From positions 12,462,001 through 12,526,000 of the forward strand of contig OZ296654.1 of assembly GCA_965655095.1 (NCBI GenBank): 64,000 bases of DNA, given 5' to 3'. The translations under genes were made by a program, and so were the position numbers. The notes beneath the pieces are model-generated. The model was not told the DNA's origin, ran no database searches, and worked only from the letters and a program-made list of their open reading frames with translations. This DNA comes from Haplodiscus bocki (taxonomy: Eukaryota). Positions 1 through 41,789 of this stretch are shown here, piece by piece (the stretch's first letter is position 1; each line of letters starts with the position of its first letter).

Positions 1-1089
1 TATCGCTACAGTATATGATGGAAATGAAGCCCAAATGTACAATTAAGTGAGTTCAAGTAACTCTCATGCAAACAGTCTGTAAGCGTTTCCTCTCAGTTTG
101 ATTTGTTGGATGGTAATGTTTCAAGACGGCGCTTCAATATAGAGCTCAAAGAGAGCGTCCTCAGGCATAATTTAAACCGGGCTGGTAATATAATGAAGAA
201 TCTGCATCAATGGACAAACTGTGCTTTTCAGAAGCAGGATGTTCGAACACTTGTCTAAAAATTTGAATCCAGTTCGTACATACTGATCAACTTTATCCTC
301 GTTCTAACGTAGACTTCTGTTTGAGGAAATCAATATCAACATGCAACAAGTTTTTGATCACGAAAACAAATGATGAAAACTACCAAAGTTAAACGGAACT
401 TGAGAACGTAGGAGGGCAGGTGAATTGCGACGCAACTTGTTTGAAACATAGAGTGCAAATATGTCAGTTCCTTTCTTCAAGTAGGTTTTTCCCAATTTTG
501 TGAGTTGATGCAATTCGCGTCAGTTTACGTACACATATAAAGCGTTTGGCATTTTTGTTAGTACGAGTTGAATCAGAAAGATTCAGATTTGGGCCGTCCA
601 CTAGGATTTTTTTTACATGACCCGGTGTGTTGTCTACCGCTAGTCTGCAAATAACTCGCTAACTCAAAATTATACAAGACTACTTATTATCACTATTTGA
701 TCCTACAGCCTTTCCATTGAGAACCGAATGCAGACTCAACCGAGAAACGTACCCCTTCTATATTTGTAGTTACTTAAACAAAGAAGCGCTTACTTGATGG
801 ACATTATTTTGTCGAAATCGAGATACGGCAAGTAGCACAAAACTACTCATGAAGATCCTGTGATAAATATTGTGGACAAAAAGTCCTATTCCAAGTTAAA
901 ATGCGACTTTGAGCTCGGGTTTGCTGATATAATAAACTTTGCATATTAGCGGTGTCTCTTGTAACCTTTGTTGTGGATTTTGGCAATTAACTTTTCAAGA
1001 ATTTGTGAAACCAATCTTATTCTTTTCATTTCTTTGATTACTTTGAGCAATTGATTACTATGACTCTGCGTTTCTAATTTCAATCCCAT

Positions 1090-2110
1090 TCAGAATGTTT
1101 GAAAAAGGCAATCAATATTTTTGGAAAACGTGAGGTCTCCAGTTTTACCGGAAAAACTCATGCGGACTGGAAGTGGGCTCAGGCTTTGGCACATTGAACG
1201 CCACTCCAAGTCGAAGCAGGTATTCTTACGTGTTGTCCTAGTATATTCTGACAACTCCAGAGCTGAAAATGTAGAAAATCCAGAAGCAAAACACTCTGCG
1301 TTTCCCGGTGACTTCAAATTGAATCCGTGATGTGCTGAAGGAGTCGGAAGACGGCGTGAACTCGACTTCTTTCGCTCTTCATGTTGGTTTCTCGTTTTTC
1401 GGTTCCTAGCCTCTTATTGCAGCAAGAAAGAGTGTTTTTCGAAAGGAGCTGTGTGCTCGAGCAGTTTTTCAAAAACAAAAACCAGGTCAACATTGTTGGC
1501 GGCACCTATAAGTGGGAGCTCAACGCGTATTGATTGTTCCAGGACAAAGGAACTGACAGAATTGATTGGTTTTTGATGATTGGCTGCGCAGTCTTTGGCT
1601 GTTGCTGGCTTGTGATTTATTTTGAAAAATTACTGGATTAATAGCTTCATGCAATGAGTTATATGAGAAGCAAAAGAAATCAGAGCAAGTTGTCAGACTT
1701 CTTGCTCTGATTTCTTTTACTTCTTCGGAGTTGTTTTCGGTTTTGAAATTTATCGCTACACTATATGATGCAAATGAAGCCCAAATGTACAATTAAATGA
1801 GTTCAAGTAACTCTCATGCAAACAGTCTGTAAGCGTTTCCTCTCAGTTTGACTTGTTGCTTGTTAATGTTTCAAGACGGCGCTTCAATAGAGAGCTCAAA
1901 GAGAGCGTGCTCAGGCATAAAATAAACCGGGCTGGGAATATAATGAAGAATCTGCATCAGTGAACCAACTGTGCTTTTCAAAACCAGGATGTTCGAACAC
2001 TTGTCTAAAAATTTGAATCCAGCTCGTACATACTGATCAACTTTATCCTCGTTCTAACGTAGACTTCTGTTTGAGGAAATCAATATCAATATGCAACAAG
2101 TTTTTGATCA
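1090..2110 (-). pseudogene. Decayed protein-coding sequence within the monomer (representative copy; present in every unit), product unknown
   Basis: Minus-strand ORF fragments tile the monomer (1792-1520, 1505-1314, 1317-1090, plus a largely open frame from ~2050 to 1793). Relic-versus-modern blocks show synonymous and conservative changes in minus-strand frames, e.g. EQSIRVELPLIGA / ENPIRVELSVTGA and IPSPVYFMPEHALFELYIEAPS / LPSSVCFIAEKAVLALLIKAPT. Confidence 0.55.
1563..1586 (-). promoter_or_regulatory. Paired CCAAT (NF-Y-like) boxes, repeated in every monomer (representative copy)
   Basis: The minus strand reads CAGCCAATCA-TCAAA-AACCAATCA, with cores 14 bp apart (ATTGG at 1565 and 1579). 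Motif match only; function is not shown. Confidence 0.25.
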
Positions 2111-4242
2111 CGAAAACAAATGATGAAAACTACCAAAGTTAAACGGAACTTGAGAACGTAGGAGGGCAGGTGAATTGCGACGCAACTTGTTTGAAACATA
2201 GAGTGCAAATATGTCAGTTCCTTTCTTCAAGTAGGTTTTTCCCAATTTTGTGAGTTGATGCAATTCGCGTCAGTTTACGTACACATATAAAGCGTTTGGC
2301 ATTTTTGTTAGTACGAGTTGAATCAGAAAGATTCAGATTTGGGCCGTCCACTAGGATTTTTTTTACATGACCCGGTGTGTTGTCTACCGCTAGTCTGCAA
2401 ATAACTCGCTAACTCAAAATTATACAAGACTACTTATTATCACTATTTGATCCTACAGCCTTTCCATTGAGAACCGAATGCAGACTCAACCGAGAAACGT
2501 ACCCCTTCTATATTTGTAGTTACTTAAACAAAGAAGCGCTTACTTGATGGACATTATTTTGTCGAAATCGAGATACGGCAAGTAGCACAAAACTACTCAT
2601 GAAGATCCTGTGATAAATATTGTGGACAAAAAGTCCTTTTCCAAGTTAAAATGCGACTTTGAGCTCGGGTTTGCTGATATAATAAACTTTGCATATTAGC
2701 GGTGTCTCTTGTAACCTTTGTTGTGGATTTTGGCAATTAACTTTTCAAGAATTTGTGAAACCAATCTTATTCTTTTCATTTCTTTGATTACTTTGAGCAA
2801 TTGATTACTATGACTCTGCGTTTCTAATTTCAATCCCATTCAGAATGTTTGAAAAAGGCAATCAATATTTTTGGAAAACGTGAGGTCTCCAGTTTTACCG
2901 GAAAAACTCATGCGGACTGGAAGTGGGCTCAGGCTTTGGCACATTGAACGCCACTCCAAGTCGAAGCAGGTATTCTTACGTGTTGTCCTAGTATATTCTG
3001 ACAACTCCAGAGCTGAAAATGTAGAAAATCCAGAAGCAAAACACTCTGCGTTTCCCGGTGACTTCAAATTGAATCCGTGATGTGCTGAAGGAGTCGGAAG
3101 ACGGCGTGAACTCGACTTCTTTCGCTCTTCATGTTGGTTTCTCGTTTTTCGGTTCCTAGCCTCTTATTGCAGCAAGAAAGAGTGTTTTTCGAAAGGAGCT
3201 GTGTGCTCGAGCAGTTTTTCAAAAACAAAAACCAGGTCAACATTGTTGGCGGCACCTATAAGTGGGAGCTCAACGCGTATTGATTGTTCCAGGACAAAGG
3301 AACTGACAGAATTGATTGGTTTTTGATGATTGGCTGCGCAGTCTTTGGCTGTTGCTGGCTTGTGATTTATTTTGAAAAATTACTGGATTAATAGCTTCAT
3401 GCAATGAGTTATATGAGAAGCAAAAGAAATCAGAGCAAGTTGTCAGACTTCTTGCTCTGATTTCTTTTACTTCTTCGGAGTTGTTTTCGGTTTTGAAATT
3501 TATCGCTACACTATATGATGCAAATGAAGCCCAAATGTACAATTAAATGAGTTCAAGTAACTCTCATGCAAACAGTCTGTAAGCGTTTCCTCTCAGTTTG
3601 ACTTGTTGCTTGTTAATGTTTCAAGACGGCGCTTCAATAGAGAGCTCAAAGAGAGCGTGCTCAGGCATAAAATAAACCGGGCTGGGAATATAATGAAGAA
3701 TCTGCATCAGTGAACCAACTGTGCTTTTCAAAACCAGGATGTTCGAACACTTGTCTAAAAATTTGAATCCAGCTCGTACATACTGATCAACTTTATCCTC
3801 GTTCTAACGTAGACTTCTGTTTGAGGAAATCAATATCAACATGCAACAAGTTTTTGATCACGAAAACAAATGATGAAGACTACCAAAGTTAAACGGAACT
3901 TGAGAACGTAGGAGGGCAGGTGAATTGCGACGCAACTTGTTTGAAACATAGAGTGCAATATGTCAGTTCCTTTCTTCAAGTAGGTTTTTCCCAATTTTGT
4001 GAGTTGACTGCTGTTGCTTCATAAATTCCCCCTTATCTCTCACTAGCAGTATCTGTGAGTCAGTCCCCAGAGACTTACATTGGCAATTCAATTTAGTTGA
4101 ACGCAATTTGTTTCCCTTTGTAATCTGAATAATTGAATATTTCATTTTCTATTTTCCTTTCATCGCTCGTAAAGCCCTTGCTTTTGAACTGACGCCTTCC
4201 TTGTTCGCGGAGCCAGCAAGGCAGCCAAAATGGAGAGATAAA

Positions 4243-4332
4243 AGCTCTAAAGACTCGTTCTGTTTTTAAACAATAATTGAAGCGCGGCTGCCGCTGCTTT
4301 AATGGAGTGTTTGTCACGCGCCGTTTAGAGCT
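4243..4332. other. Imperfect ~90-nt hairpin (nested inverted repeats)
   Basis: AGCTCTAAA 4243-4251 / TTTAGAGCT 4324-4332; AAACA 4268-4272 / TGTTT 4308-4312; ATTGAAGC 4276-4283 / GCTTTAAT 4296-4303 (one G-U pair); GCGG 4284-4287 / CCGC 4291-4294; loop CTG. Confidence 0.6.
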
Positions 4333-4830
4333 AACCGAAAATTAGAATCAAATATTTTTTGCATATTCAACCTCTATTTCCTCTTACTACATGCTCTGCG
4401 ACAGCTCCAAGTTGTGAATGTGATGATCCAAGCTCTGCTTTGAGAACATTTTGCGTCGAAATTTGTTGTTTTTCAGAATGGTTTTTGTTTTAAACTACCT
4501 TTTTAAAATTGTTTCGTCCAGAGATTAATCAAATGAGTTTTCTTGTTTCGCGTCATAACATCTCTCGTATTCATATCGCAAGGAAAATCATTCCTCCATT
4601 CGGAAGACTTTTCCTGTTCGTTTGCCTATTCTTGTTGCGTTAACTATTGATCTAATTCCTTCCTTTTTTGCTAGTGTATGGATCATTTAAACTGCCAAGT
4701 TGAAATATATATCTCTACTTTCTGAGACACTGATTGTATGTTGTATGGTAAATTTTTAGGACCTTAGTAGAATTTTTTTTCTGAAATTCTGCAAGAAAAG
4801 GAAAATATTCGAGAATGTTGTTTTCTTTTT

Positions 4831-5070
4831 CATATTCCCCTCGATGCGTAGAAATGAAGTTTTGACAACAGCAGCCAAAAATAATTCGCTGAAGGCCCGA
4901 ATAAAACCTGAAACTCTTCGTTTTTTTCTCCTCAAAATGTTCGACTGGGGACGTAGAATGTAGTTTGAACAACACCAAGTGACAAGTTTTTCGCCAGGAA
5001 ATCGAAAAAAAATTCAAAGTCGCTCAAAATGTTTGGCTGGACACATGAAAATGAGTTTTGAGAACACCAG
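4831..5070 (+). repeat. Three degenerate direct copies of a ~45-60-bp motif (approx. CTCAAAATGTTnnnCTGGACACGTAGAATGnAGTTTTGACAACACC), spaced ~92-100 bp
   Basis: 4831 CATATTCCCCTCGATGCGTAGAAATGAAGTTTTGACAACAGC; 4931 CTCAAAATGTTCGACTGGGGACGTAGAATGTAGTTTGAACAACACC; 5023 CTCAAAATGTTTGGCTGGACACATGAAAATGAGTTTTGAGAACACC. Confidence 0.75.
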
Positions 5071-5304
5071 TTTTTGTCTAAAATAGTACTTACTGAGCTA
5101 AAAGCGAGCCTCCGGAGACCGTAGGATGCTTCCTTTTCTTGAACTTTTCTGCAATTTCCTTTTTGAGCTTTTTCTGACCCATAGTCGGGAGAAAGCGTCG
5201 CGATGCTGGTGCACCTTTTTTGGGTGTAGATAGATTTAGACGAAATATTTTGATGGGTTTTCTCAATGATTATTAGAACATGCCTCCAAAAGCATAGGCT
5301 GTTC

Positions 5305-5341
5305 ATGATCAAAAGTAGTTTGTAATGACCAAAGTAGTTTT
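5305..5341 (+). repeat. Short tandem duplication, period 20 bp
   Basis: ATGATCAAAAGTAGTTTGTA is followed by ATGACCAAAGTAGTTTT. Confidence 0.7.
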
Positions 5342-5699
5342 CTCTTCAACTGCCTGTTCTATTTTTTTTTTCATGCAGGGATCAGTCGGATTTTTTTCTG
5401 CAGGTAGGTGTAGTTCCAGCATTCTCGGTGATCTTTTCGCAGACAATTTATGTGGCGAATATTTTTTATTTCAGTTGGAGTTGAATTTCTTGATTTTCCG
5501 AAATATTTTTTTTCAAGTACCTCTTCCAATTCTTTCACCCAGGGCTCAATCAATAGTCTTTTTTGTTTAGATTGATACAAACGCTACCAATTTCCAGTTG
5601 TAATGTTTTTTTTCATAGTTTGTTGTGAAATCGGGTCGTGAGTTTCTTCCAACAGATATCGTAGTGTTCTTACAACGATATCAAACATTAGTTGATTCA

Positions 5700-6789
5700 G
5701 CAGTGATTGAGTTCAAGTTAGACTTGCGTAACAGAACTTTCGGCGTTTTTCTCTCATTTTCAAGTGTCAATTGATAATTTTTAGTCGGCGCTTTTATTAA
5801 GAGCGCGAGGACAGCCTTTTCAGCTATGAAACAAACACTGCTGGGAAGAATTTCAGCATCAATAGACAAAATACGCCTTGCAAAAGTGGAATCTTTGACT
5901 TCTCGTAATAAAAACAGTCCAGCTCGTACATTGTGATCAAGTTTTTCCATACTCTAACACAGACATTTGTTTGAGGAAATCATTCCTATCATCAACATGC
6001 AACAAAATGTTTAACTCGAAAAAAAATGAACAAGGCTACCAAAAATGAAGGGAACTTAAAGGAACGTAAGAGGTCAGATGCATTGCGAAGCAGCTTAATT
6101 TGAAACAATTTGGGCACCAGTGGAGCTGGAACTTGTATATTGAATAAGATTTCCTCCGAGAGTTTCTGATGACCATATTCTGTATCAGTATTTAATTATA
6201 GGAAACGTTTGGCGTATTTTCACACCAGATGAATTGGAGAAACTCAGGTTTGTTCGACCCAATTGGAGCTTGTGTTTATTTGATCGGGGTTTCATTTTTC
6301 TTAGCTTTATTGCATTAGTTACTAACTAAAACCTTATCCTACATGATACATCTATGGTAAAGCGTTCAGCATGAATCCGCAAAAAATCTGAAACTTTCCC
6401 TACTGGAATGGAAGATACGCAATTTACCAAATTAAAATTTGGGAAAACTAGGTTTTTTTACCTTGTTCAAATCTATGCCACTCATCTTTGGTCTACTTCA
6501 CTTTCAGCGCCAGCCAACTCAAACCAAGCTGAGATAAAACACGGTGATAGCGCTCTCTGTGTGCCGTCCGCATTGAGTCGGAACGCTGCGTTACGGCGAC
6601 TGCTTTCGCCGATAATATCCGTTTCTCCCATTTTTGACATCGCAGCTCCTTCATGCAGGAACACTAAACTGTGTTTTCCGAAGGAGCTGTTTTTTCAGAC
6701 CATCGGGTGCAAAACGTAGTTCCACAGTTTTATTCGGCGCCTGTAACCGAAAGCTCGACTCGTATTGGATTCTCCGACGCAGACAAACG
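5700..6789. repeat. Highly diverged relic monomer of the satellite, lacking a counterpart of monomer positions ~700-1150
   Basis: Collinear exact blocks shared with the monomer: TGAGTTCAAGT (5708), CGGCGCTT (5786), TCCAGCTCGTACA (5918), TGTTTGAGGAAATCA (5968), ATCAACATGCAACAA (5991), CGTTTGGC (6206), GAGTCGGAA (6575), AAGGAGCTGT (6681). It joins the modern monomer in register at GACAGAATTG (6790). Confidence 0.92.
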
Positions 6790-9447
6790 GACAGAATTGA
6801 TTGGTTTTTGATGATTGGCTGCGCAGTCTTTGGCTGCTCCTGGCTTGAAAATTATTTTGAAAAATTACTGGATTATTAGCTTCATGCAATGAGTTATATG
6901 AGAAGTAAAAGAAATCTGGGCAAGTTGTCAGACTTCTTGCTCTGATTTCTTTTACTTCTTCGGAGTTGTCTTCGGTTTTGAAATTTATCGCTACAGTATA
7001 TGATGGAAATGAAGCCCAAATGTACAATTAAGTGAGTTCAAGTAACTCTCATGCAAACAGTCTGTAAGCGTTTCCTCTCAGTTTGATTTGTTGGATGGTA
7101 ATGTTTCAAGACGGCGCTTCAATATAGAGCTCAAAGAGAGCGTCCTCAGGCATAATTTAAACCGGGCTGGTAATATAATGAAGAATCTGCATCAATGGAC
7201 AAACTGTGCTTTTCAGAAGCAGGATGTTCGAACACTTGTCTAAAAATTTGAATCCAGTTCGTACATACTGATCAACTTTATCCTCGTTCTAACGTAGACT
7301 TCTGTTTGAGGAAATCAATATCAACATGCAACAAGTTTTTGATCACGAAAACAAATGATGAAAACTACCAAAGTTAAACGGAACTTGAGAACGTAGGAGG
7401 GCAGGTGAATTGCGACGCAACTTGTTTGAAACATAGAGTGCAAATATGTCAGTTCCTTTCTTCAAGTAGGTTTTTCCCAATTTTGTGAGTTGATGCAATT
7501 CGCGTCAGTTCACGTACACATATAAAGCGTTTGGCATTTTTGTTAGTACGAGTTGAATCAGAAAGATTCAGATTTGGGCCGTCCACTAGGATTTTTTTTA
7601 CATGACCCGGTGTGTTGTCTACCGCTAGTCTGCAAATAACTCGCTAACTCAAAATTATACAAGACTACTTATTATCACTATTTGATCCTACAGCCTTTCC
7701 ATTGAGAACCGAATGCAGACTCAACCGAGAAACGTACCCCTTCTATATTTGTAGTTACTTAAACAAAGAAGCGCTTACTTGATGGACATTATTTTGTCGA
7801 AATCGAGATACGGCAAGTAGCACAAAACTACTCATGAAGATCCTGTGATAAATATTGTGGACAAAAAGTCCTATTCCAAGTTAAAATGCGACTTTGAGCT
7901 CGGGTTTGCTGATATAATAAACTTTGCATATTAGCGGTGTCTCTTGTAACCTTTGTTGTGGAATTTGGCAAATAACTTTTCAAGAATTTGTGAAACCAAT
8001 CTTATTCTTTTCATTTCTTTGATTACTTTGAGCAATTGATTACTATGACTCTGCGTTTCTAATTTCAATCCCATTCAGAATGTTTGAAAAAGGCAATCAA
8101 TATTTTTGGAAAACGTGAGGTCTCCAGTTTTACCGGAAAAACTCATGCGGACTGGAAGTGGGCTCAGGCTTTGGCACATTGAACGCCACTCCAAGTCGAA
8201 GCAGGTATTCTTACGTGTCGTCCTAGTATATTCTGAGACCTCCAAACCTGAAAATGTAGAAAATCCAGAAGCAAAGCACTCTGCGTTCCCCGGTGAATTA
8301 AATTGAATCCGTGATGTGCTGAAGGAGTCGGAAGACGGCGTGAACTCGACTTTTTCCGCTCTTCATGTTGGTTTTTCGTTTTTCGCTTCCTAGCCTCTTA
8401 TTGCAGCAAGAAAGTGTGTTTTTTGAATTGAGCTGTGTGCTCGAGCAAATTTTCAGAACTAAAAACCTAGGTCAACATTGTTGGCGGTACCTATAAGTGG
8501 GAGCTCAACGCGTATTCATTGTTCCAGGACAAAGTAACTGATAGAATTGATTGGTTTTTGATGATTGGCTGCGCAGTCTTTGGCTGTTACTGGCTTGGGA
8601 TTTATTTTGAAAGTTTACGGGATTAATAGCTTCATGCAATGAGTTATATGAGAAGTAAAAGAAGTCAGAGCAAGTTGTCAGACTTCCTGCTCTGATTTCT
8701 TTTACTTCTTAGGAGTTGTCTTCGGTTTTGAAATTTATCGCTACAGTATATGATAGAAATGAAGCCCAAATGTACAATTAAATCAGTTCAAGTAACTCTC
8801 ATGCAAACAATCTGTAAGCGTTTCCTCTCAGTTTGATTTGTTGGATGTTAATGTTTCAAGACGGCGCTTCAATATAGAGCTCAAAGAGAGCGTGCTCAGG
8901 CATAAAATAAACCGGGCTGGGAATATAATGATGATTCTGCATCAGTGGACAAACTGTGCTTTTCAGAAGCAGGATGTTCGAACACTTGTCTAAAAATTTG
9001 AATCCAGCTCGTACATACTGGTCAACTTTATCCTCGTTCTAACGTAGACTTCTGTTTGAGGAAATCAATATCAACATGCAACAAGTTTTTGATCACGAAA
9101 ACAAATGATGAAGACTACCAAAGTTAAACGGAACTTGAGAACGTAGGAGGGCAGGTGAATTGCGACGCAACTTGTTTGAAACATAGAGTGCAATATGTCA
9201 GTTCCTTTCTTCCAGTAGGTTTTTCCCAATTTTGTGAGTTGATGCAATTCGCGTCAGTTTACGTACACCTAAATCGTTTGGCATTTTTGTTAGTACGAAT
9301 TGAATAATAAAAATTCAGATTTGGGCCGTCCACTCGAATTTTTTAACATGACCCGGTGTGTTGTCTACCGCTAGTCTGCAAATGACTCGCTAACTCAAAA
9401 TTATACAAGACAACTTCTTATCACTGTTTGATCCTACAGCCTTTCCA

Positions 9448-9726
9448 TTAAGAACCGAATGCATACTCAACGGAGAAACGTACCCTTTCTATATTTGTAG
9501 TTACTAAAACGAAGCGCTTACTTGATGGACGTCTTTTTATCGAAATCGAGATACGGAAAGTAGCACAAAACCCTTCATGAAGATCCTGTGATAAATATTG
9601 TGGACAATAAGTCTTATCCCAAGTTAAAATGCGACTTTGAGCTCGAGTTTGCTGATATAATAATTTTTGCAAATTAGCGGTGTCTCTTCTAACCTTTGCT
9701 ATGGAATTTGGCAAATAAATTTTCAA
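9448..9726 (-). pseudogene. 92-aa ORF fragment in a divergent monomer, with a weak DDE-transposase-like DxxY...RxxxExxFG pattern
   Basis: The translation ...ILTWDKTYCPQYLSQDLHE...ERVRFSVEYAFGS resembles the second-D and E motifs of IS4/IS5/PIF-Harbinger-type transposases by eye only. No first D or TIRs identified. Confidence 0.25.
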
Positions 9727-10249
9727 GAATTTGTGAAACCAATCTTCGACTTTTCATTTCTTTGTTTACTTTGAGCAATTGAATACTATGACACTGCCTT
9801 TCTAATTTCAATCCCCTCCAGAATGTTCAAAAATGTCAATCAATGTTTTTGGAAAACGTGAGTTCTCGAGTTTTACCGGAAAAACATGCGGACTGGAAGT
9901 GCGCTCAAGCTTTGGCACATTGAACGCCACTCCAAGTCGAAGCAGGTATTCTTACGTGTTGTCCTAGTATATTCTGACAACTCCAGAGCTGAAAATGTAG
10001 AAAATCCAGAAGCAAAACACTGTGCGTTTCCCGGTGACTTCAAATTGAATCCGTGATGTGCTGAAGGAGTCGGAAGACGGCGTGAACTCGACTTCTTTCG
10101 CTCTTCATGTTGGTTTCTCGTTTTTCGGTTCCTAGCCTCTTATTGCAGCAAGAAAGAGTGTTTTTCGAAAGGAGCTGTGTGCTCGAGCAGTTTTTCAAAA
10201 ACAAAAACCAGGTCAACATGGTTGGCGGCACCTATAAGTGGGAGCTCAA

Positions 10250-13200
10250 CGCGTATTGATTGTTCCAGGACAAAGGAACTGACAGAATTGATTGGTTTTT
10301 GATGATTGGCTGCGCAGTCTTTGGCTGTTGCTGGCTTGTGATTTATTTTGAAAAATTACTGGATTAATAGCTTCATGCAATGAGTTATATGAGAAGCAAA
10401 AGAAATCAGAGCAAGTTGTCAGACTTCTTGCTCTGATTTCTTTTACATCTTCGGTTTTGAAATTTATCGCTACACTATATGATGCAAATGAAGCCCAAAT
10501 GTACAATTAAATGAGTTCAGGGAACTCTCATGCAAACAGTCTGTAAGCGTTCCCTCTCAGTTTGACTTGTTGGATGTTAATGTTTTAAGACGGCGCTTCA
10601 ATATAGAGCTCAAAGAGAGCGTCCTCAGGCATAAATTGAACCGGGCTGGTAATATAATGAAGAATCTGCATCAGTGGACAAACTGTGCTTTTCAGAAGAA
10701 GGATGTTCGAACACTTGTCTAAAAATTTGAATCCAGCTCGTACATACTGCTCAACTTTATCCTCGTTCTAACGTAGACTTCTGTTTGAGGAGATCAATAT
10801 CAACATGCAACACTTTTTTGAACACGAAAACAAATGATGACGACTACCAAAATTGAACGGAACTTGAGAACGTAGGAGGCCAGGTGAATTGCGATGCAAC
10901 TTGTTTGAAACATAGAGTGCAATATGTCAGTTCCTTTCTTCAAGTAGGTTTTTCCCAATTTTGTGAGTTGATGCAATTCGAGTCAGTTTAAGTACACATA
11001 AAGCGTTTGGCATTTTTGTTAGTACGAGTTGAATGAGAAAGATTCAGATTTGGGCCGTCCACTAGGATTTTTTTACATGACCCGGCGTGTTGTCTACCGC
11101 TAGTCTGCAAATAACTCGCTAACTCAAAATTATACAAGACAACTTTCTATCACTATTTGATCCTACAGCCTTTCCATAGAGAACCGAATGCAGATTCAAC
11201 CGAGAAACGTACCCCTTCTATATTTGTAGTTACTTAAACAAAGAAGCGCTTACTTGATGGACATTATTTTATCGAAATCGAGATACGGCAAGTAGCACAA
11301 AACTACTCATGAAGATCCTGTGATAAATATTGTGGACAAAAAGTCCTATTCCAAGTTAAAATGAGACTTTGAGCTCGGGTTTGCTGATATAATAAACTTT
11401 GCATATTAGCGGTGTCTCTTCTAACCTTTGTTATGGAAATTGGCAATTAAATTTTCAAGAATTTGTGAAACCAATCTAATTCTTTTCATTTCTTTGATTA
11501 CTTTGAGCAATTGATTACAATGACACTGCGTTTCTAATTTCAATCCCATTCAGAATGTTTGAAAATGGCAATCAATATTTTTGGAAGACATGAGGTCTCG
11601 AGTTTTACCGGAAAAACTCATGCGGACTGGAAGTGGGCTCAAGCTTTGGCACATTGAACGCCACTCCAAGTCGAAGCAGGTATTCTTACGTGTTGTCCTA
11701 GTATATTCTGACAACTCCAGAGCTGAAAATGTAGAAAATCCAGAAGCAAAACACTGTGCGTTTCCCGGTGACTTCAAATTGAATCCGTGATGTGCTGAAG
11801 GAGTCGGAAGACGGCGTGAACTCGACTTCTTTCGCTCTTCATGTTGGTTTCTTGTTTTTCGGTTCCTAGCCTCTTATTGCAGCAAGAAAGAGTTTTTCGA
11901 AAGGAGCTGTGTGCTCGAGCAGTTTTTCAAAAACAAAAACCAGGTCAACATTGTTGGCGGCACCTATAAGTGGGAGCTCAACGCGTATTGATTGTTCCGG
12001 GACAAAGGAACTGACAGAATTGATTGGTTTTTGATGATTGGCTGCGCAGTCTTTGGCTGTTGCTGGCTTGTGATTTATTTTGAAAAATTACTGGATTATT
12101 AGCTTCATGCAATGAGTTATATGAGAAGCAAAAGAAATCAGAGCAAGTTGTCAGACTTCTTGCTCTGATTTCTTTTACATCTTCGGTTTTGAAATTTATC
12201 GCTACACTATATGATGCAAATGAAGCCCAAATGTACAATTAAATGAGTTCAGGGAACTCTCATGCAAACAGTCTGTAAGCGTTCCCTCTCAGTTTGACTT
12301 GCTGGATGTTAATGTTTTAAGACGGCGCTTCAATATAGAGCTCAAAGAGAGCGTCCTCAGGCATAAATTGAACCGGGCTGGTAATATAATGAAGAATCTG
12401 CATCAGTGGACAAACTGTGCTTTTCAGAAGAAGGATGTTCGAACACTTGTCTAAAAATTTGAATCCAGCTCGTACATACTGCTCAACTTTATCCTCGTTC
12501 TAACGTAGACTTCTGTTTGAGGAGATCAATATCAACATGCAACACGTTTTTGAACACGAAAACAAATGATGACGACTACCAAAATTGAACGGAACTTGAG
12601 AATGTAGGAGGACAGGTGAATTGCGATGCAACTTGTTTGAAACATAGAGTGCAATATGTCAGTTCCTTTCTTCAAGTAGGTTTTTCCCAATTTTGTGAGT
12701 TGATGCAATTCGAGTCAGTTTAAGTACACATAAAGCGTTTGGCATTCTTGTCAGTACGAGTTGAATGAGAAAGATTCAGATTTGGGCCGTCCACTAGGAT
12801 TTTTTTACATGACCCGGTGTGTTGTCTACCGCTAGTCTGCAAATAACTCGCTAACTCAAAATTATACAAGACAACTTTATATCACTATTTGATCCTACAG
12901 CCTTTCCATTGAGAACCGAATGCAGACTCAACCGAGAAACGTACCCCTTCTATATTTGTAGTCGCTTAAACAAAGAAGCGCTTACTTGATGGACATTGTT
13001 TTATCGAAATCGAGATACGGCAAGTAGCACAAAACTACTCATGAAGATCCTGTGATGAATATTGTGGACAAAAAGTCCTATTCCAAGTTAAAATGCGACT
13101 TTGAGCTCGGGTTTGCTGATATAATAAACTTTGCATATTAGCGGTGTCTCTTTTAACCTTTGTTATGGACTTTGGCAATTAAATTTTCAAGAATTTGTGA

Positions 13201-16200
13201 AACCAATCTAATTCTTTTCATTTCTTTGATTACTTGGAGCAATTGATTACTATGACACTGCGTTTCTAATTTCAATCCCATTCAGAATGTTTGAAAATGG
13301 CAATCAATATTTTTGGAAGACGTGAGGTCTCGAGTTTTACCGGAAAAACATGCGGACTGGAAGTGGGCTCAAGCTTTGGCACATTGAACGCCACTCCAAG
13401 TCGAAGCAGGTATTCTTACGTGTTGTCCTAGTATATTCTGACAACTCCAGAGCTGAAGATGTAGAAAATCCAGAAGCAAAACACTCTGCGTTTCCCGGTG
13501 ACTTCAATTTCAATCCGTGATGTGCTGAAGGAGTCGGAAGACTTCGTGAACTCGACTTCTTCCGCTCTTCATGTTGGTTTCTCGTTTTTCGGTTCCTAGC
13601 CTCTTATTGCAGCAAGAATGTGTTTTTCGAAAGGAGCTGTGTGCTCGAGCAATTTTTCAAAAACAAAAACCAGGTCAACATTGTTGGCGGCACCTATAAG
13701 TGGGAGCTCAATGCGTATTGATTGTTCCAGGACAAAGGAACTGACAGAATTGATTGGTTTTTGATGATTGGCTGCGCAGTCTTTGGCTGTTGCTGGCTTG
13801 TGATTTTTTTTGAAAAATTACTGGATTAATAGCTTCATGCAATGAGTTATATGAGAAGCAAAAGAAATCAGAGCAAGTTGTCAGACTTCTTGCTCTGATT
13901 TCTTTTACTTCTTCGGAGTTGTCTTCGGTTTTGAAATTTATCGCTACACTATATGATGCAAATGAAGCCCAAATGTACAATTAAATGAGTTCAAGTAACT
14001 CTCATGCAAACAGTCTGTAAGCGTTTCCTCTCAGTTTGACTTGTTGGATGTTAATGCTTTAAGACGGCGCTTCAATATAGAGCTCAAAGAGAGCGTCCTC
14101 AGGCATAAATTGAACCGGGCTGGTAATATAATGAAGAATCTGCATCAGTGGACAAACTGTGCTTTTCAGAAGAAGGATGTTCGAACACTTGTCTAAAAAT
14201 TTGAATCCAGCTCGTACATACTGCTCAACTTTATCCTCGTTCTAACGTAGACTTCTGTTTGAGGAGATCAATATCAACATGCAACACGTTTTTGAACACG
14301 AAAACAAATGATGACGACTACCAAAATTGAACGGAACTTGAGAACGTAGGAGGCCAGGTGAATTGCGATGCAACTTGTTTGAAACATAGAGTGCAATATG
14401 TCAGTTCCCTTCTTCAAGTAGGTTTTTCCCAATTTTGTGAGTTGATGCAATTCGAGTCAGTTTAGGTACACATAAAGCGTTTGGCATTTTTGTTAGTACG
14501 AGTAGAATGAGAAAGATTCAGATTTGGGCCGTCCACTAGGATTTTTTTACATGACCCGGTGTGTTGTCTACCGCTAGTCTGCAAATAACTCGCTACCTCA
14601 AAATTATACAAGACAACTTTATATCACTATTTGATCCTACAGCCTTTCCATTGAGAACCGAATGCAGACTCAACCGAGAAACGTACCCCTTCTATATTTG
14701 TAGTTACTTAAACAAAGAAGCGCTTACTTGATGGACATTATTTTATCGAAATCGAGATACGGCAAGTAGCACAAAACTACTCATGAAGATCCTGTGATGA
14801 ATATTGTGGACAAAAAGTCCTATTCCAAGTTAAAATGCGACTTTGAGCTCGGGTTTGCTGATATAATAAACTTTGCATATTAGCGGTGTCTCTTCTAACC
14901 TTTGTTATGGAATTTGGCAATTAAATTTTCAAGAATTTGTGAAACCAATCTAATTCTTTTCATTTCTTTGATTACTTTGAGCAGTTGATTACAATGACAC
15001 TGCGTTTCTAATTTCAATCCCATTCAGAATGTTTGAAAATGGCAATCAATATTTTTGGAAGACGTGAGGTCTCGAGTTTTACCGGAAAAACTCATGCGGA
15101 CTGGAAGTGGACTCAAGCTTTGGCACATTGAACGCCACTCCAAGTCGAAGCAGGTATTCTTACGTGTTGTCCTAGTATATTCTGACAACTCCAGAGCTGA
15201 AAATGTAGAAAATCCAGAAGCAAAACACTGTGCGTTTCCCGGTGACTTCAATTTCAATCCGTGATGTGCTGAAGGAGTCGGAAGACGGCGTGAACTCGAC
15301 TTCTTTCGCTCTTCATGTTGGTTTCTTGTTTTTCGGTTCCTAGCCTCTTATTGCAGCAAGAAAGAGTTTTTCGAAAGGAGCTGTGTGCTCGAGCAGTTTT
15401 TCAAAAACAAAAACCAGGTCAACATTGTTGGCGGCACCTATAAGTGGGAGCTCAACGCGTATTGATTGTTCCGGGACAAAGGAACTGACAGAATTGATTG
15501 GTTTTTGATGATTGGCTGCGCAGTCTTAGGCTGTTGCTGGCTTGTGATTTATTTTGAAAAATTACTGGATTATTAGCTTCATGCAATGAGTTATATGAGA
15601 AGCAAAAGAAATCAGAGCAAGTTGTCAGACTTCTTGCTCTGATTTCTTTTACATCTTCGGTTTTGAAGTTTATCGCTACACTATATGATGCAAATGAAGC
15701 CCAAATGTACAATTAAATGAGTTCAAGTAACTCTCATGCAAACAGTCTGTAAGCGTTTCCTCTCAGTTTGACTTGTTGGATGTTAATGTTTTAAGACGGC
15801 GCTTCAATATAGAGCTCAAAGAGAGCGTCCTCAGGCATAAATTGAACCGGGCTGGTAATATAATGAAGAATCTGCATCAGTGGACAAACTGTGCTTTTCA
15901 GAAGAAGGATGTTCGAACACTTGTCTAAAAATTTGAATCCAGCTCGTACATACTGCTCAACTTTATCCTCGTTCTAACGTAGACTTCTGTTTGAGGAGAT
16001 CAATATCAACATGCAACACGTTTTTGAACACGAAAACAAATGATGACGACTACCAAAATTGAACGGAACTTGAGAACGTAGGAGGCCAGGTGAATTGCGA
16101 TGCAACTTGTTTGAAACATAGAGTGCAATATGTCAGTTCCCTTCTTCAAGTAGGTTTTTCCCAATTTTGTGAGTTGATGCAATTCGAGTCAGTTTAGGTA

Positions 16201-19200
16201 CACATAAAGCGTTTGGCATTTTTGTTAGTACGAGTAGAATGAGAAAGATTCAGATTTGGGCCGTCCACTAGGATTTTTTTACATGACCCGGTGTGTTGTC
16301 TACCGCTAGTCTGCAAATAACTCGCTAACTCAAAATTATACAAGACAACTTTATATCACTATTTGATCCTACAGCCTTTCCATTGAGAACCGAATGCAGA
16401 CTCAACCGAGAAACGTACCCCTTCTATATTTGTAGTTACTTAAACAAAGAAGCGCTTACTTGATGGACATTATTTTATCGAAATCGAGATACGGCAAGTA
16501 GCACAAAACTACTCATGAAGATCCTGTGATGAATATTGTGGACAAAAAGTCCTATTCCAAGTTAAAATGCGACTTTGAGCTCGGGTTTGCTGATATAATA
16601 AACTTTGCATATTAGCGGTGTCTCTTCTAACCTTTGTTATGGAATTTGGCAATTAAATTTTCAAGAATTTGTGAAACCAATCTAATTCTTTTCATTTCTT
16701 TGATTACTTTGAGCAATTGATTACAGTGACACTGCGTTTCTAATTTCAATCCCATTCAGAATGTTTGAAAATGGCAATCAATATTTTTGGAAGACGTGAG
16801 GTCTCGAGTTTTACCGGAAAAACTCATGCGGACTGGAAGTGGACTCAAGCTTTGGCACATTGAACGCCACTCCAAGTCGAAGCAGGTATTCTTACGTGTT
16901 GTCCTAGTATATTCTGACAACTCCAGAGCTGAAAATGTAGAAAATCCAGAAGCAAAACACTGTGCGTTTCCCGGTGACTTCAAATTGAATCCGTGATGTG
17001 CTGAAGGAGTCGGAAGACGGCGTGAACTCGACTTCTTTCGCTCTTCATGTTGGTTTCTTGTTTTTCGGTTCCTAGCCTCTTATTGCAGCAAGAAAGAGTT
17101 TTTCGAAAGGAGCTGTGTGCTCGAGCAGTTTTTCAAAAACAAAAACCAGGTCAACATTGTTGGCGGCACCTATAAGTGGGAGCTCAACGCGTATTGATTG
17201 TTCCGGGACAAAGGAACTGACAGAATTGATTGGTTTTTGATGATTGGCTGCGCAGTCTTTGGCTGTTGCTGGCTTGTGATTTATTTTGAAAAATTACTGG
17301 ATTATTAGCTTCATGCAATGAGTTATATGAGAAGCAAAAGAAATCAGAGCAAGTTGTCAGACTTCTTGCTCTGATTTCTTTTACATCTTCGGTTTTGAAA
17401 TTTATCGCTACACTATATGATGCAAATGAAGCCCAAATGTACAATTAAATGAGTTCAAGTAACTCTCATGCAAACAGTCTGTAAGCGTTTCCTCTCAGTT
17501 TGACTTGTTGGATGTTAATGTTTTAAGACGGCGCTTCAATATAGAGCTCAAAGAGAGCGTCCTCAGGCATAAATTGAACCGGGCTGGTAATATAATGAAG
17601 AATCTGCATCAGTGGACAAACTGTGCTTTTCAGAAGAAGGATGTTCGAACACTTGTCTAAAAATTTGAATCCAGCTCGTACATACTGCTCAACTTTATCC
17701 TCGTTCTAACGTAGACTTCTGTTTGAGGAGATCAATATCAACATGCAACACGTTTTTGAACACGAAAACAAATGATGACGACTACCAAAATTGAACGGAA
17801 CTTGAGAATGTAGGAGGCCAGGTGAATTGCGATGCAACTTGTTTGAAACATAGAGTGCAATATGTCAGTTCCTTTCTTCAAGTAGGTTTTTCCCAATTTT
17901 GTGAGTTGATGCAATTCGAGTCAGTTTAAGTACACATAAAGCGTTTGGCATTTTTGTCAGTACGAGTTGAATGAGAAAGATTCAGATTTGGGCCGTCCAC
18001 TAGGATTTTTTTACATGACCCGGTGTGTTGTCTACCGCTAGTCTGCAAATAACTCGCTAACTCAAAATTATACAAGACAACTTTATATCACTATTTGATC
18101 CTACAGCCTTTCCATTGAGAACCGAATGCAGACTCAACCGAGAAACGTACCCCTTCTATATTTGTAGTCACTTAAACAAAGAAGCGCTTACTTGATGGAC
18201 ATTGTTTTATCGAAATCGAGATACGGCAAGTAGCACAAAACTACTCATGAAGATCCTGTGATGAATATTGTGGACAAAAAGTCCTATTCCAAGTTAAAAT
18301 GCGACTTTGAGCTCGGGTTTGCTGATATAATAAACTTTGCATATTAGCGGTGTCTCTTCTAACCTTTGTTATGGACTTTGGCAATTAAATTTTCAAGAAT
18401 TTGTGAAACCAATCTAATTCTTTTCATTTCTTTGATTACTTGGAGCAATTGATTACTATGACACTGCGTTTCTAATTTCAATCCCATTCAGAATGTTTGA
18501 AAATGGCAATCAATATTTTTGGAAGACGTGAGGTCTCGAGTTTTACCGGAAAAACATGCGGACTGGAAGTGGGCTCAAGCTTTGGCACATTGAACGCCAC
18601 TCCAAGTCGAAGCAGGTATTCTTACGTGTTGTCCTAGTATATTCTGACAACTCCAGAGCTGAAGATGTAGAAAATCCAGAAGCAAAACACTCTGCGTTTC
18701 CCGGTGACTTCAATTTCAATCCGTGATGTGCTGAAGGAGTCGGAAGACGGCGTGAACTCGACTTCTTCCGCTCTTCATGTTGGTTTCTCGTTTTTCGGTT
18801 CCTAGCCTCTTATTGCAGCAAGAATGTGTTTTTCGAAAGGAGCTGTGTGCTCGAGCAATTTTTCAAAAACAAAAACCAGGTCAACATTGTTGGCGGCACC
18901 TATAAGTGGGAGCTCAATGCGTATTGATTGTTCCAGGACAAAGGAACAGACAGAATTGATTGGTTTTTGATGATTGGCTGCGCAGTCTTTGGCTGTTGCT
19001 GGCTTGTGATTTTTTTTTGAAAAATTACTGGATTAATAGCTTCATGCAATGAGTTATTTGAGAAGCAAAAGAAATCAGAGCAAGTTGTCAGACTTCTTGC
19101 TCTGATTTCTTTTACTTCTTCGGAGTTGTCTTCGGTTTTGAAATTTATCGCTACACTATATGATGCAAATGAAGCCCAAATGTACAATTAAATGAGTTCA

Positions 19201-20500
19201 AGTAACTCTCATGCAAACAGTCTGTAAGCGTTTCCTCTCAGTTTGACTTGTTGGATGTTAATGTTTTAAGACGGCGCTTCAATATAGAGCTCAAAGAGAG
19301 CGTCCTCAGGCATAAATTGAACCGGGCTGGTAATATAATGAAGAATCTGCATCAGTGGACAAACTGTGCTTTTCAGAAGAAGGATGTTCGAACACTTGTC
19401 TAAAAATTTGAATCCAGCTCGTACATACTGCTCAACTTTATCCTCGTTCTAACGTAGACTTCTGTTTGAGGAGATCAATATCAACATGCAACACGTTTTT
19501 GAACACGAAAACAAATGATGACGACTACCAAAATTGAACGGAACTTGAGAACGTAGGAGGCCAGGTGAATTGCGATGCAACTTGTTTGAAACATAGAGTG
19601 CAATATGTCAGTTCCCTTCTTCAAGTAGGTTTTTCCCAATTTTGTGAGTTGATGCACTTCGAGTCAGTTTAAGTACACATAAAGCGTTTGGCATTTTTGT
19701 TAGTACGAGTAGAATGAGAAAGATTCAGATTTGGGCCGTCCACTAGGATTTTTTTACATGACCCGGTGTGTTGTCTACCGCTAGTCTGCAAATAACTCGC
19801 TAACTCAAAATTATACAAGACAACTTTATATCACTATTTGATCCTACAGCCTTTCCATTGAGAACCGAATGCAGACTCAACCGAGAAACGTACCCCTTCT
19901 ATATTTGTAGTTACTTAAACAAAGAAGCGCTTACCTGATGGACATTGTTTTATCGAAATCGAGATACGGCAAGTAGCACAAAACTACTCATGAAGATCCT
20001 GTGATGAATATTGTGGACAAAAAGTCCTATTCCAAGTTAAAATGCGACTTTGAGCTCGGGTTTGCTGATATAATAAACTTTGCATATTAGCGGTGTCTCT
20101 TCTAACCTTTGTTATGGACTTTGGCAATTAAATTTTCAAGAATTTGTGAAACCAATCTAATTCTTTTCATTTCTTTGATTACTTGGAGCAATTGATTACT
20201 ATGACACTGCGTTTCTAATTTCAATCCCATTCAGAATGTTTGAAAATGGCAATCAATATTTTTGGAAGACGTGAGGTCTCGAGTTTTACCGGAAAAACTC
20301 ATGCGGACTGGAAGTGGGCTCAAGCTTTGGCACATTGAACGCCACTCCAAGTCGAAGCAGGTATTCTTACGTGTTGTCCTAGTATATTCTGACAACTCCA
20401 GAGCTGAAGATGTAGAAAATCCAGAAGCAAAACACTCTGCGTTTCCCGGTGACTTCAATTTCAATCCGTGATGTGCTGAAGGAGTCGGAAGACGGCGTGA
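10250..20500. repeat. Imperfect trimer higher-order repeat, period ~5206 bp
   Basis: The 12-bp deletion follows a del/del/full pattern twice (10447, 12179 | 15653, 17385). The 2-bp deletion GGAAAAACATG occurs at 13349 and 18555. Anchor offsets are 5206-5207. Confidence 0.75.
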
Positions 20501-41500: not shown

Positions 41501-41789
41501 TCCAGGACAAAGGAACTGACAGAATTGATTGGTTTTTGATGATTGGCTGCGCAGTCTTTGGCTGTTGCTGGCTTGTGATTTATTTTGAAAAATTACTGGA
41601 TTAATAGCTTCATGCAATGAGTTATATGAGAAGCAAAAGAAATCAGAGCAAGTTGTCAGACTTCTTGCTCTGATTTCTTTTACTTCTTCGGAGTTGTCTT
41701 CGGTTTTGAAATTTATCGCTACACTATATGATGCAAATGAAGCCCAAATGTACAATTAAATGAGTTCAAGTAACTCTCATGCAAACAGT

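What the first reader, a model, noticed from the sequence alone, without database searches (positions are those of the whole stretch)
1090..2110. The macrosatellite appears to be a dead minus-strand gene (or protein repeat) amplified into a satellite
Seen: minus-strand ORF fragments nearly tile the monomer. I hand-counted relic-versus-modern substitutions by codon position (1st/2nd/3rd) in four minus-strand blocks: 6/6/10 (relic ~6733-6795, with synonymous GAA/GAG, CGC/CGA, GTT/GTC, CTC/CTT, GGT/GGC around IRVEL...GA), 4/3/8 (6575-6625), 8/4/8 (5783-5848, 22 gap-free, stop-free codons) and 4/6/6 (~5940-6020, with an in-frame 6-bp indel but no clear bias). Inference: relic and modern units diverged while still coding, as tandem paralogs or as repeats of one large protein, and one copy then decayed and amplified. 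The counts are small and the frames were chosen by eye, so this is suggestive rather than proven.
Basis: partly seen in the sequence, partly recalled or inferred. Interest (0 to 1): 0.7.

Follow-up and report, generated by a model that had tools for sequence, protein, structure and literature searches.

The report
Satellite built from dead IAP-gene fragment
About two thirds of this 1.74-kb tandem repeat is a broken piece of an apoptosis-inhibitor (BIR/IAP) gene on the minus strand, so the repeat is gene-derived, but the piece was dead before it was amplified and has only drifted since.

Summary
The window is part of an ~88-kb array (~50 units of ~1742 bp) on contig C7 of a 1.5-Gb animal genome.

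- Minus-strand open segments cover 85-92% of a unit. Dinucleotide shuffles give 74±11%.
- Relic-versus-modern substitutions fall evenly over the three phases (53/56/57 in the window relic; 110/118/108 over three old copies).
- pN/pS is 0.6-1.1 in all six frames.

**The core idea is nevertheless partly right.**
- An old inverted copy 270 kb away (C7:12796643-12797800) keeps two spliceable exons of a BIR/IAP-like gene.
- Support for the BIR reading: Pfam BIR at 23.2 bits, multi-BIR IAPs at E=1.9e-8 among 1.84 billion proteins, all four zinc ligands present, and a predicted BIR3-like fold.
- Unit positions 154-1341, minus strand, are collinear with that gene: 13 nt of intron, exon E2, the E2-E3 intron, and half of exon E3.
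- Only ~20% of the unit was ever coding, and 554 nt are of unknown origin.

**The founder was already dead.** Both edge relics and all 33 modern units examined share a TGG>TAG change at the conserved Trp, a lost splice acceptor, and truncation before the last zinc-binding Cys.

Verdict: an ordinary gene-fragment-derived satellite. The scan has noted similar dead-gene and transposon arrays elsewhere in this genome.

The parts
1147..1334 (-). Remnant of exon E2 (the C-terminal two thirds of BIR-A) in unit 1, inside the finding's stretch. It keeps the acceptor (TTCAG|CAC) and the donor GT. The second zinc-binding Cys has become Ser, and all modern units share frameshifts here.
1335..1347 (-). 13-nt stub of the intron upstream of E2. 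Homology to the paralog ends here.
1348..1903 (.). About 554 nt of unknown origin (unit 1342-1742 plus 1-153). It holds a palindrome with 29-nt arms, seen in the reference unit at 43374-43432. No relative was found outside the array.
1904..2072 (-). Remnant of the first half of exon E3 (BIR-B) in unit 2. TAG replaces the conserved Trp codon at 2054-2056. The acceptor AG is lost, and the exon is cut after 'E-[DH]-A', before the last zinc-binding Cys.
154..322 (-). The same E3 remnant in unit 1, with TAG at 304-306.
323..1146 (-). Derived from the E2-E3 intron (about 820 nt here, 653 nt in the paralog). Parts of it align to the paralog's intron. Unit positions ~528-780 also occur as a low-copy dispersed piece.
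41867..43054 (-). The whole gene-derived segment in the reference unit 41714-43455: E3 part 41867-42035, intron 42036-42855, E2 42856-43041, intron stub to 43054.
5811..5972 (-). E3 remnant in the relic unit. It has the same TAG (5954-5956), the same lost acceptor and the same truncation point, plus private 2-nt and 7-nt deletions.
4208..7607 (+). Recent duplicate (99.6% identical) of the array's left flank, the relic and the start of the array. The window's relic is therefore a copy of the true edge relic at C7:12460723-12461997.
1..64000 (+). Part of one array, C7:12460723-12549336 (~88.6 kb, ~50 units).

Best explanation
The repeat unit is a chimera.

**Shown: what the unit is made of.**
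- Unit positions 154-1341, read on the minus strand, are a 1.19-kb genomic piece of an IAP-like paralog with two BIR domains.
- In order, the piece holds the last 13 nt of an intron, exon E2 (BIR-A from 'ARHGFY' onward), the E2-E3 intron, and the first 169 nt of exon E3 (BIR-B up to 'EHA').
- The other 554 nt have no detectable source.

**Shown: the piece was already broken.**
- Every array lineage carries the same nonsense codon at the BIR Trp, the same lost E3 acceptor and the same truncation before the fourth zinc ligand.
- The differences among relics and modern units show no codon periodicity, even in the true frame.
- Among modern units, variable sites are equally dense in the exon, intron and unknown parts.

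**Inferred: the history.**
- A local inverted duplication of an IAP-like gene left one copy near C7:12.797 Mb and one at the array site.
- The array-site copy was broken by rearrangement and point mutations.
- A 1.74-kb segment spanning the break was then duplicated in tandem and grew by unequal exchange to ~50 units. The centre stayed homogenised and decayed relics were left at both edges.
- The array most likely has no coding function and drifts as ordinary satellite DNA.
For: **DNA homology.** The unit matches the distal locus at unit 1083-1333 (73%, E=5e-34) and at unit 187-643 (66%, E=1e-22). Both matches are collinear and inverted.

**The distal exons are BIR.**
- Pfam PF00653 scores 23.2 bits (cut-off 22.9, E=1e-4) for E3 and 19.4 bits (E=1.5e-3) for E2.
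- Nearly all hits among solved structures are cIAP1 or XIAP BIR domains.
- phmmer against 1.84 billion proteins finds multi-BIR proteins down to E=1.9e-8. One hit (E=1.3e-6) is named 'baculoviral IAP repeat-containing protein 7-B-like', XP_074600664.1.
- C37, C40, H59 and C66 are invariant in the alignment, and W10 sits on the conserved Trp.
- The AlphaFold model (pLDDT 81) matches cIAP1 and XIAP BIR3 at TM 0.53-0.62.

**Gene model of the paralog.**
- The E2 acceptor is ttttttag|CTCG and the donor is CAG|GTAATG.
- The E3 acceptor is ttccag|AGCC and the donor is CAAG|GTTTGT.
- E2 and E3 join in frame.
- A gene in another organism (L054) has the same BIR exons and a RING exon (PF13920). It shows protein-level similarity only, 39% over 90 aa, with no nucleotide similarity.

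**Direct protein matches of the units.** The distal E3 ORF hits about 50 units at E=1e-7 to 1e-4. Pairwise BLASTP gives E=1e-12 for the E3 piece and E=2e-5 for window 1090-1314(-).

**Death before amplification.** TAG is present in 33 of 33 modern units and in both relics, and all share the acceptor loss and the breakpoint.

**Neutral drift.** Variable-site density is 0.134-0.161 in every compartment.
Against: - The modern units themselves give no Pfam hit. Their BIR origin therefore rests on a chain of homology through the distal paralog.
- The Pfam scores of the paralog are marginal, and the structural model was built with canonical BIRs in its alignment, so it is not fully independent.
- The exon boundaries are inferred from splice consensus, frame compatibility and cross-species conservation. 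No RNA run was available to confirm them.
- The shared TAG could in principle have swept through an early array by homogenisation before the relics were left behind.
- The source of 554 nt (32% of the unit) is unknown.
- The order of the events (duplication, breakage, amplification) is inference.
Confidence: 0.8

Rival explanations
1. First reader's full model. The units were functional tandem paralogs, or repeats of one large protein, and relic and modern copies diverged under purifying selection before one copy died and was amplified.
For: - The monomer does contain BIR-coding remnants on the minus strand.
- In distal-versus-modern comparisons, second codon positions are slightly poorer in changes (36/24/38 over E2+E3). 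By my own calculation this gives p of about 0.17, so it is not significant.
Against: - All array lineages share the nonsense codon, the lost acceptor and the truncated E3.
- Every unit lacks the N-terminal third of BIR-A and the last zinc ligand of BIR-B.
- There is no phase bias in any test, and pN/pS is alike in all six frames.
- Unit length is not a multiple of 3.
Confidence: 0.06
2. Purely non-coding satellite. The minus-strand ORFs and the BIR resemblance are chance.
For: - ORF coverage, stop counts and the longest ORF all fall within the shuffled expectation.
- The modern ORFs have no Pfam hit.
Against: - Two separate parts of the unit are DNA-homologous to two adjacent exons that each match BIR independently.
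- phmmer gives E=1.9e-8 in 1.84 billion proteins.
- Splice sites and frame are coherent.
- The exons are conserved in another species.
Confidence: 0.04
3. The BIR fragment came from a mobile element or an integrated virus carrying an IAP gene, not from a host gene. The satellite would then be element-derived, like other arrays in this genome.
For: - IAP genes occur in several large DNA viruses (my own knowledge).
- Other arrays in this genome were read as transposon- or Maverick-derived (earlier notes).
- Part of the intron-derived region (unit ~528-780) is a low-copy dispersed piece.
Against: - The paralog has spliceosomal introns that split the BIR domains at the same places as the 3-BIR+RING gene of another organism.
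- No transposase, RT, integrase or capsid domain turned up in any ORF scanned.
- The unit has no terminal repeats, only one internal palindrome.
- Relatives are confined to a ~350-kb neighbourhood plus one small piece on C9.
Confidence: 0.05
4. The distal locus is not the ancestral-like paralog. It is an old escaped piece of the array that looks better preserved by chance.
For: - The distal locus itself sits among local duplications: a 2.6-kb duplicated segment with a second, broken BIR-B piece, and a unit-like piece 1.5 kb upstream.
- Its E3 evolves almost neutrally against the 95%-identical locus L053: 14 substitutions, 10 of them non-synonymous.
Against: - The distal locus keeps what every array copy lacks: the rest of E3, including the fourth zinc ligand and about 45 further residues conserved with another species. 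It also keeps the Trp codon, the E3 acceptor and the intron upstream of E2.
- A copy of a truncated unit could not regain these.
Confidence: 0.05

Closest known systems
Gene-bearing macrosatellites such as human D4Z4 (DUX4 retrogene in each 3.3-kb unit)
   Same: Kilobase-sized units repeated head to tail tens of times at one locus, with each unit carrying sequence of a protein-coding gene (PMC12376486, PMC13558733, PMC8122249).
   Different: D4Z4 units keep a complete, translatable ORF. Here each unit holds only a fragment (two partial exons and an intron) with a nonsense codon, a lost splice site and a truncation. No unit can encode a BIR domain.
Satellites seeded by dead genes or transposons in this same genome (earlier scan notes: DUF4116-gene array, hAT, MULE, LINE and tRNA-Arg arrays)
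   Same: A single-locus array of 40-130 kb, made of 1-3-kb units that contain a decayed fossil of a gene or element. It has old copies at the edges and drifts neutrally.
   Different: The fossil here is an IAP/BIR gene fragment with its intron, plus 554 nt of unknown source. I did not re-test those earlier notes.
IAP / BIRC family (BIR domains, often with a C-terminal RING)
   Same: The paralog's exons have the BIR signature (C-x2-C...H-x6-C, conserved Trp, 'AGF' motif) and a BIR3-like predicted fold. The relative in another organism has three BIR exons and a RING exon.
   Different: - In this genome no RING exon was found near the paralog.
- BIR-B has 18 rather than 16 residues between the second Cys and the His.
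- BIR-A has a shortened His-Cys spacing.
- The satellite copies have lost the ligands.

Membership tests
BIR domain (Pfam PF00653): distal paralog exons | Profile score at or above Pfam's gathering threshold | tested here: met
   E3 ORF: 23.2 bits against a cut-off of 22.9, E=1e-4. E2 ORF: 19.4 bits, E=1.5e-3, below the cut-off. The relative P0010 scores 24.9 bits.
BIR domain (Pfam PF00653): distal paralog exons | Four zinc ligands, C-x2-C-x16-H-x6-C, and a conserved Trp in the N-terminal part | tested here: met
   C37, C40, H59 and C66 are invariant in alignment A1, and W10 is aligned to the conserved Trp. The spacing is x18 rather than x16 in BIR-B. BIR-A has C-x2-C-x16-H with a shortened H-C spacing.
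BIR domain (Pfam PF00653): distal paralog exons | BIR fold | tested here: met
   The AlphaFold2 model has pLDDT 81 and pTM 0.72. All top Foldseek matches are cIAP1, XIAP or DIAP1 BIR domains, at TM 0.53-0.62 and E=2e-3 or weaker. The input alignment contained canonical BIRs, so this is only partly independent.
BIR domain: the satellite units themselves | Profile match and intact zinc ligands | tested here: not met
   - The unit ORFs have no Pfam hit.
- In BIR-B the first Cys is Ser, the His is Asp in most units, and the fourth ligand is absent.
- TAG sits at the Trp codon in 33 of 33 units.
- The units are fossils of BIR exons, not members of the family.
IAP protein (BIR plus RING E3 ligase) | C-terminal RING (zf-C3HC4_3) in the same gene | tested here: inconclusive
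   The RING exon is present 3 kb downstream in the other organism's gene (L054, PF13920, E=1.3e-8). With that query, no RING was found near the distal locus or the array in this genome.
Macrosatellite | Head-to-tail units of 1 kb or more, many copies, one locus | tested here: met
   About 50 units of 1729-1750 bp over C7:12460723-12549336. Outside it there are only small old fragments.
Coding tandem gene array (D4Z4/DUX4-like) | A complete open reading frame in the units | tested here: not met
   The longest open segment is 89-107 aa, as in shuffles. The exons are truncated and interrupted.
Sequence under purifying selection for coding | Excess of third-position or synonymous change in one frame | tested here: not met

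The most novel reading that the evidence does not exclude
The array might not be inert. Fifty inverted copies of an IAP pseudogene fragment lie 250-340 kb from the paralog on the same chromosome, and they could be transcribed into antisense or small RNAs. Alternatively, the array could mark a once-coding tandem cluster of mini-IAP genes that collapsed. Neither reading is excluded, because no RNA data exist for this organism in the tools. However, the 66-73% identity to the paralog is too low for sequence-specific silencing, and every unit shares the same disabling lesions.
Probability: 0.04. Interest if true: 0.55.

Novelty: new member of a known kind. Interest (0 to 1): 0.3.

Why it matters
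The finding gives a clean, datable-in-order example of how a locus-specific macrosatellite starts. A broken piece of a duplicated host gene, with exon, intron and half an exon, was joined to unrelated DNA and then amplified.

It also shows that ORF tiling and small hand-made codon counts are unreliable signs of a coding past. Here the right conclusion, a gene-derived repeat, came only through a better-preserved paralog.

Biologically it is ordinary. It points to no new mechanism and no function.

Tried and rejected
- **Pfam on unit and flank ORFs.** Scans of 19 open segments of modern units, the relic and the flank found nothing credible. The chance hits (XAF1_C, Zap1_zf2, SUD-C) were all far below their cut-offs.
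- **Rfam on 1-9000.** The only hit was a sub-threshold one (MIR5998, 27 bits against a gathering score of 180) on the 29-nt-arm palindrome. I rejected it.
- **TRF.** It cannot see the 1.74-kb period because its maximum is 500.
- **Source of the 554-nt unknown part.** The own-genome DNA search was saturated by array copies. blastn and tblastx against all fetched neighbouring loci found nothing.
- **RING, exon E1 and linker exons of the foreign IAP gene.** None was found near the array or the distal locus.
- **Whole-genome PF00653 search.** It finds only two canonical BIR exons (C2, C1) at genome-scaled E of 0.01 or better. It does not reach the distal locus, whose score is marginal.
- **tblastx of the unit against the distal locus.** Similar scores appear in all frames. 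At this divergence the similarity is at nucleotide level and gives no sign of coding constraint.
- **RNA evidence.** No run on record as RNA holds the distal locus.
- **Middle of the relic (6289-6565).** It is not alignable to unit 622-1334. The relic lacks a recognisable E2.

Full report
**What is in the window.**
- Self-comparison shows one tandem array of units 1729-1750 bp long.
- The window holds 33 complete units and further partial ones. They are 93.5-100% alike, with a mean of 96.9%.
- The window is C7:12462001-12526000 of a 1.5-Gb, 6626-contig animal assembly.
- The whole array runs from C7:12460723 to 12549336, about 88.6 kb and about 50 units.
- Window 4208-7607 is a 99.6% duplicate of the array's true left edge: flank, relic and first units. 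This agrees with an earlier follow-up note (s1-359412).
- The relic (window 5700-6985) aligns to unit positions 42-621 at 62-77% and to 1335-1742 at 77-91%. Relic positions 6289-6565 cannot be aligned to unit 622-1334.

**Checking the observation.**
- Open segments of 40 aa or more cover 85-92% of a unit on the minus strand and 62-75% on the plus strand.
- Dinucleotide shuffles of a unit give 74±11% for the minus strand, with a 95th percentile of 89%. Stop counts and longest segments are also alike. The tiling is real but unremarkable.
- For codon bias I aligned the relic to a modern neighbour and kept 14 gap-free blocks (727 nt, 166 mismatches).
  - The three phases carry 53/56/57 mismatches.
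  - Giving each block its best phase yields 73, against a permutation null of 75.3±3.3.
  - Adding the right-edge relic and a distant old copy (336 mismatches) gives 110/118/108, P=0.70.
- Nei-Gojobori pN/pS lies between 0.62 and 1.11 in all six frames for all three comparisons, and stops occur in every frame.
- No ORF of the modern units, the relic or the flank hits Pfam.

**The lead that changed the picture.**
- A genome-wide search with the unit found an inverted, 66-73% identical copy 270 kb away. It lies at C7:12796638-12797618, which is L026 2639-3619.
- On its plus strand, which corresponds to the unit's minus strand, it has a 161-aa ORF. That ORF matches Pfam BIR at 23.2 bits against a cut-off of 22.9, E=1e-4.
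- A second open segment 0.8 kb upstream matches BIR at 19.4 bits.
- Sequence searches of solved structures return almost only cIAP1 and XIAP BIR domains for both segments.
- phmmer of the first 80 residues against 1.84 billion proteins gives 13 hits.
  - One is a 90%-identical ORF.
  - One is a 48%-identical ORF from another organism (P0010).
  - The rest, apart from those two single-BIR ORFs, are multi-BIR proteins down to E=1.9e-8.
  - One hit (E=1.3e-6) is annotated 'baculoviral IAP repeat-containing protein 7-B-like'.
- In an alignment with these, C37, C40, H59 and C66 are invariant and W10 falls on the conserved Trp.
- An AlphaFold2 model (pLDDT 81) matches BIR3 domains at TM 0.53-0.62. 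The input alignment held canonical BIRs, so I count this as supporting evidence rather than independent evidence.

**Gene model of the paralog.**
- E2 is L026 2644-2830. It follows a polypyrimidine tract and AG, and ends at CAG|GTAATG. The 'stop' after ...ESFR that the paralog shares with the units is simply the TAA inside this donor site.
- E3 is L026 3484-3800. Its acceptor is ttccag|AGCC and its donor is CAAG|GTTTGT.
- E2 ends with two bases of a codon and E3 starts with the third, so they join in frame. The junction encodes the N-terminal motif of BIR-B.
- The gene of another organism (L054) gives protein-level matches only in these exons, 38-39% over 53 and 90 aa, with no nucleotide similarity. 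It has a further BIR exon upstream and a RING exon (PF13920) downstream.
- The paralog is therefore, or was until recently, a real IAP-family gene.
- Against a 95%-identical locus from another assembly (L053), E3 shows 14 substitutions of which 10 are non-synonymous. E2 shows only 2 substitutions in 222 nt, against a 3.8% background. Its present status is uncertain.
- No RING or first exon was found near it in this genome.

**Mapping the unit on the gene.**

| Unit positions (minus strand, gene 5' to 3') | Length | Origin |
|---|---|---|
| 1341-1329 | 13 nt | Intron upstream of E2 |
| 1328-1143 | 186 nt (188 nt, window 1147-1334, in unit 1) | Exon E2 |
| 1142-323 | about 820 nt | E2-E3 intron |
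| 322-154 | 169 nt (window 154-322 and 1904-2072) | Exon E3, first part |
| 1342-1742 plus 1-153 | 554 nt | No relative found |

- Homology stops in the middle of E3, after 'E-H-A'.
- About 20% of the unit is exon-derived, 48% is intron-derived and 32% is unknown.
- The finding's stretch (1090-2110) happens to span both exon remnants.
- Unit ORFs match the paralog's exons directly: E=1e-12 for the E3 piece, E=2e-5 for window 1090-1314(-), and about 50 units at E=1e-7 to 1e-4 genome-wide.

**Was the array ever coding?** The evidence says no.
- The left relic, the right relic and all 33 modern units share three lesions:
  - TAG where the paralog has the conserved TGG (window 304-306, 2054-2056, 5954-5956, 42017-42019).
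  - CTC in place of the E3 acceptor CAG; the right relic carries a deletion at this site.
  - The same truncation, which removes the fourth zinc ligand.
- All modern units also share frameshifts in E2.
- In the true E3 frame, differences by codon position are as follows:

| Comparison | Positions 1/2/3 | Codon changes |
|---|---|---|
| Left relic v modern | 21/12/18 | 29 non-synonymous, 7 synonymous |
| Right relic v modern | 13/13/16 | 26 non-synonymous, 4 synonymous |
| Left relic v right relic | 20/17/15 | 31 non-synonymous, 6 synonymous |

- Among modern units, variable sites are equally dense in the E3, intron, E2 and unknown parts, at 0.134-0.161 per site.
The other two straddle exon edges.

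**Conclusion.**
It is right by luck of direction, though, and not because of the evidence offered.
- The claim that relic and modern units diverged while coding is contradicted.
- The object is a gene-fragment-derived, locus-specific macrosatellite. That kind is known, and earlier notes of this scan describe several such arrays in this genome (I did not re-test them).

**Limits.**
- The exon model lacks RNA support, because no RNA run was available.
- The Pfam scores are marginal.
- The origin of one third of the unit and the exact founding rearrangement remain open.

Noticed in passing
L026 2644-2830 and 3484-3800 (C7:12796643-12797799, + strand): Two in-frame, splice-flanked exons of a divergent IAP-like gene. 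BIR-B has an x18 spacer and lacks the usual Trp after the CxxC. Against a 95%-identical locus (L053), E3 changes almost neutrally while E2 is unusually conserved. No first exon or RING exon was found nearby, so this may be a gene in the act of dying.
   Followed up: partly
L054 4505-9695 (ENA ERZ25071366, another organism): An apparently intact IAP gene with three BIR exons and a RING exon. Introns split the second and third BIR domains after the N-terminal 'RLxSF' motif; the first lies whole in one exon. This is the closest intact relative of the satellite's gene fragment.
   Followed up: partly
L026 4171-6750: A ~2.6-kb segment absent from the 95%-identical locus L053. It carries a second, broken copy of the BIR-B exon (L026 6594-6773, 80% nt identity, with stops). 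This is a local duplication at the paralog.
   Followed up: partly
L024 7441-7526 (C7:12553440-12553525): An isolated fragment of exon E2 with about 30 nt of its upstream intron, 4.1 kb beyond the array's right end, in the orientation of the units. It is 83% identical to modern units and 75-78% identical to the paralog. It may be a remnant of the progenitor copy.
   Followed up: partly
window 43374-43432 (unit 1661-1719; in every unit): A near-perfect palindrome with 29-nt arms (90% complementary, 1-nt loop) in the part of the unit of unknown origin. The only Rfam hit is a sub-threshold one (MIR5998, 27 bits against 180).
   Followed up: partly
L025 2661-4132 versus L026 524-1919: An inverted segmental duplication (79-87% identity) between DNA 7-8 kb left of the array and DNA just upstream of the paralog. 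It includes a unit-like piece (unit ~531-779) that also occurs on C9:74145825-74146030. The intron-derived part of the unit therefore holds a low-copy dispersed repeat.
   Followed up: partly
window 6780-6985: The last ~200 nt of the relic are 91-93% identical to modern units, while the rest is 62-77%. The relic is probably a hybrid made by exchange with the first modern unit.
   Followed up: no
window 5636-5682: A small 23-nt tandem repeat (2.1 copies) at the junction between the flank and the relic.
   Followed up: no
window 4715-5312 (- strand): Two open frames of 100 and 126 aa in the duplicated left flank. Neither has a Pfam match.
   Followed up: partly
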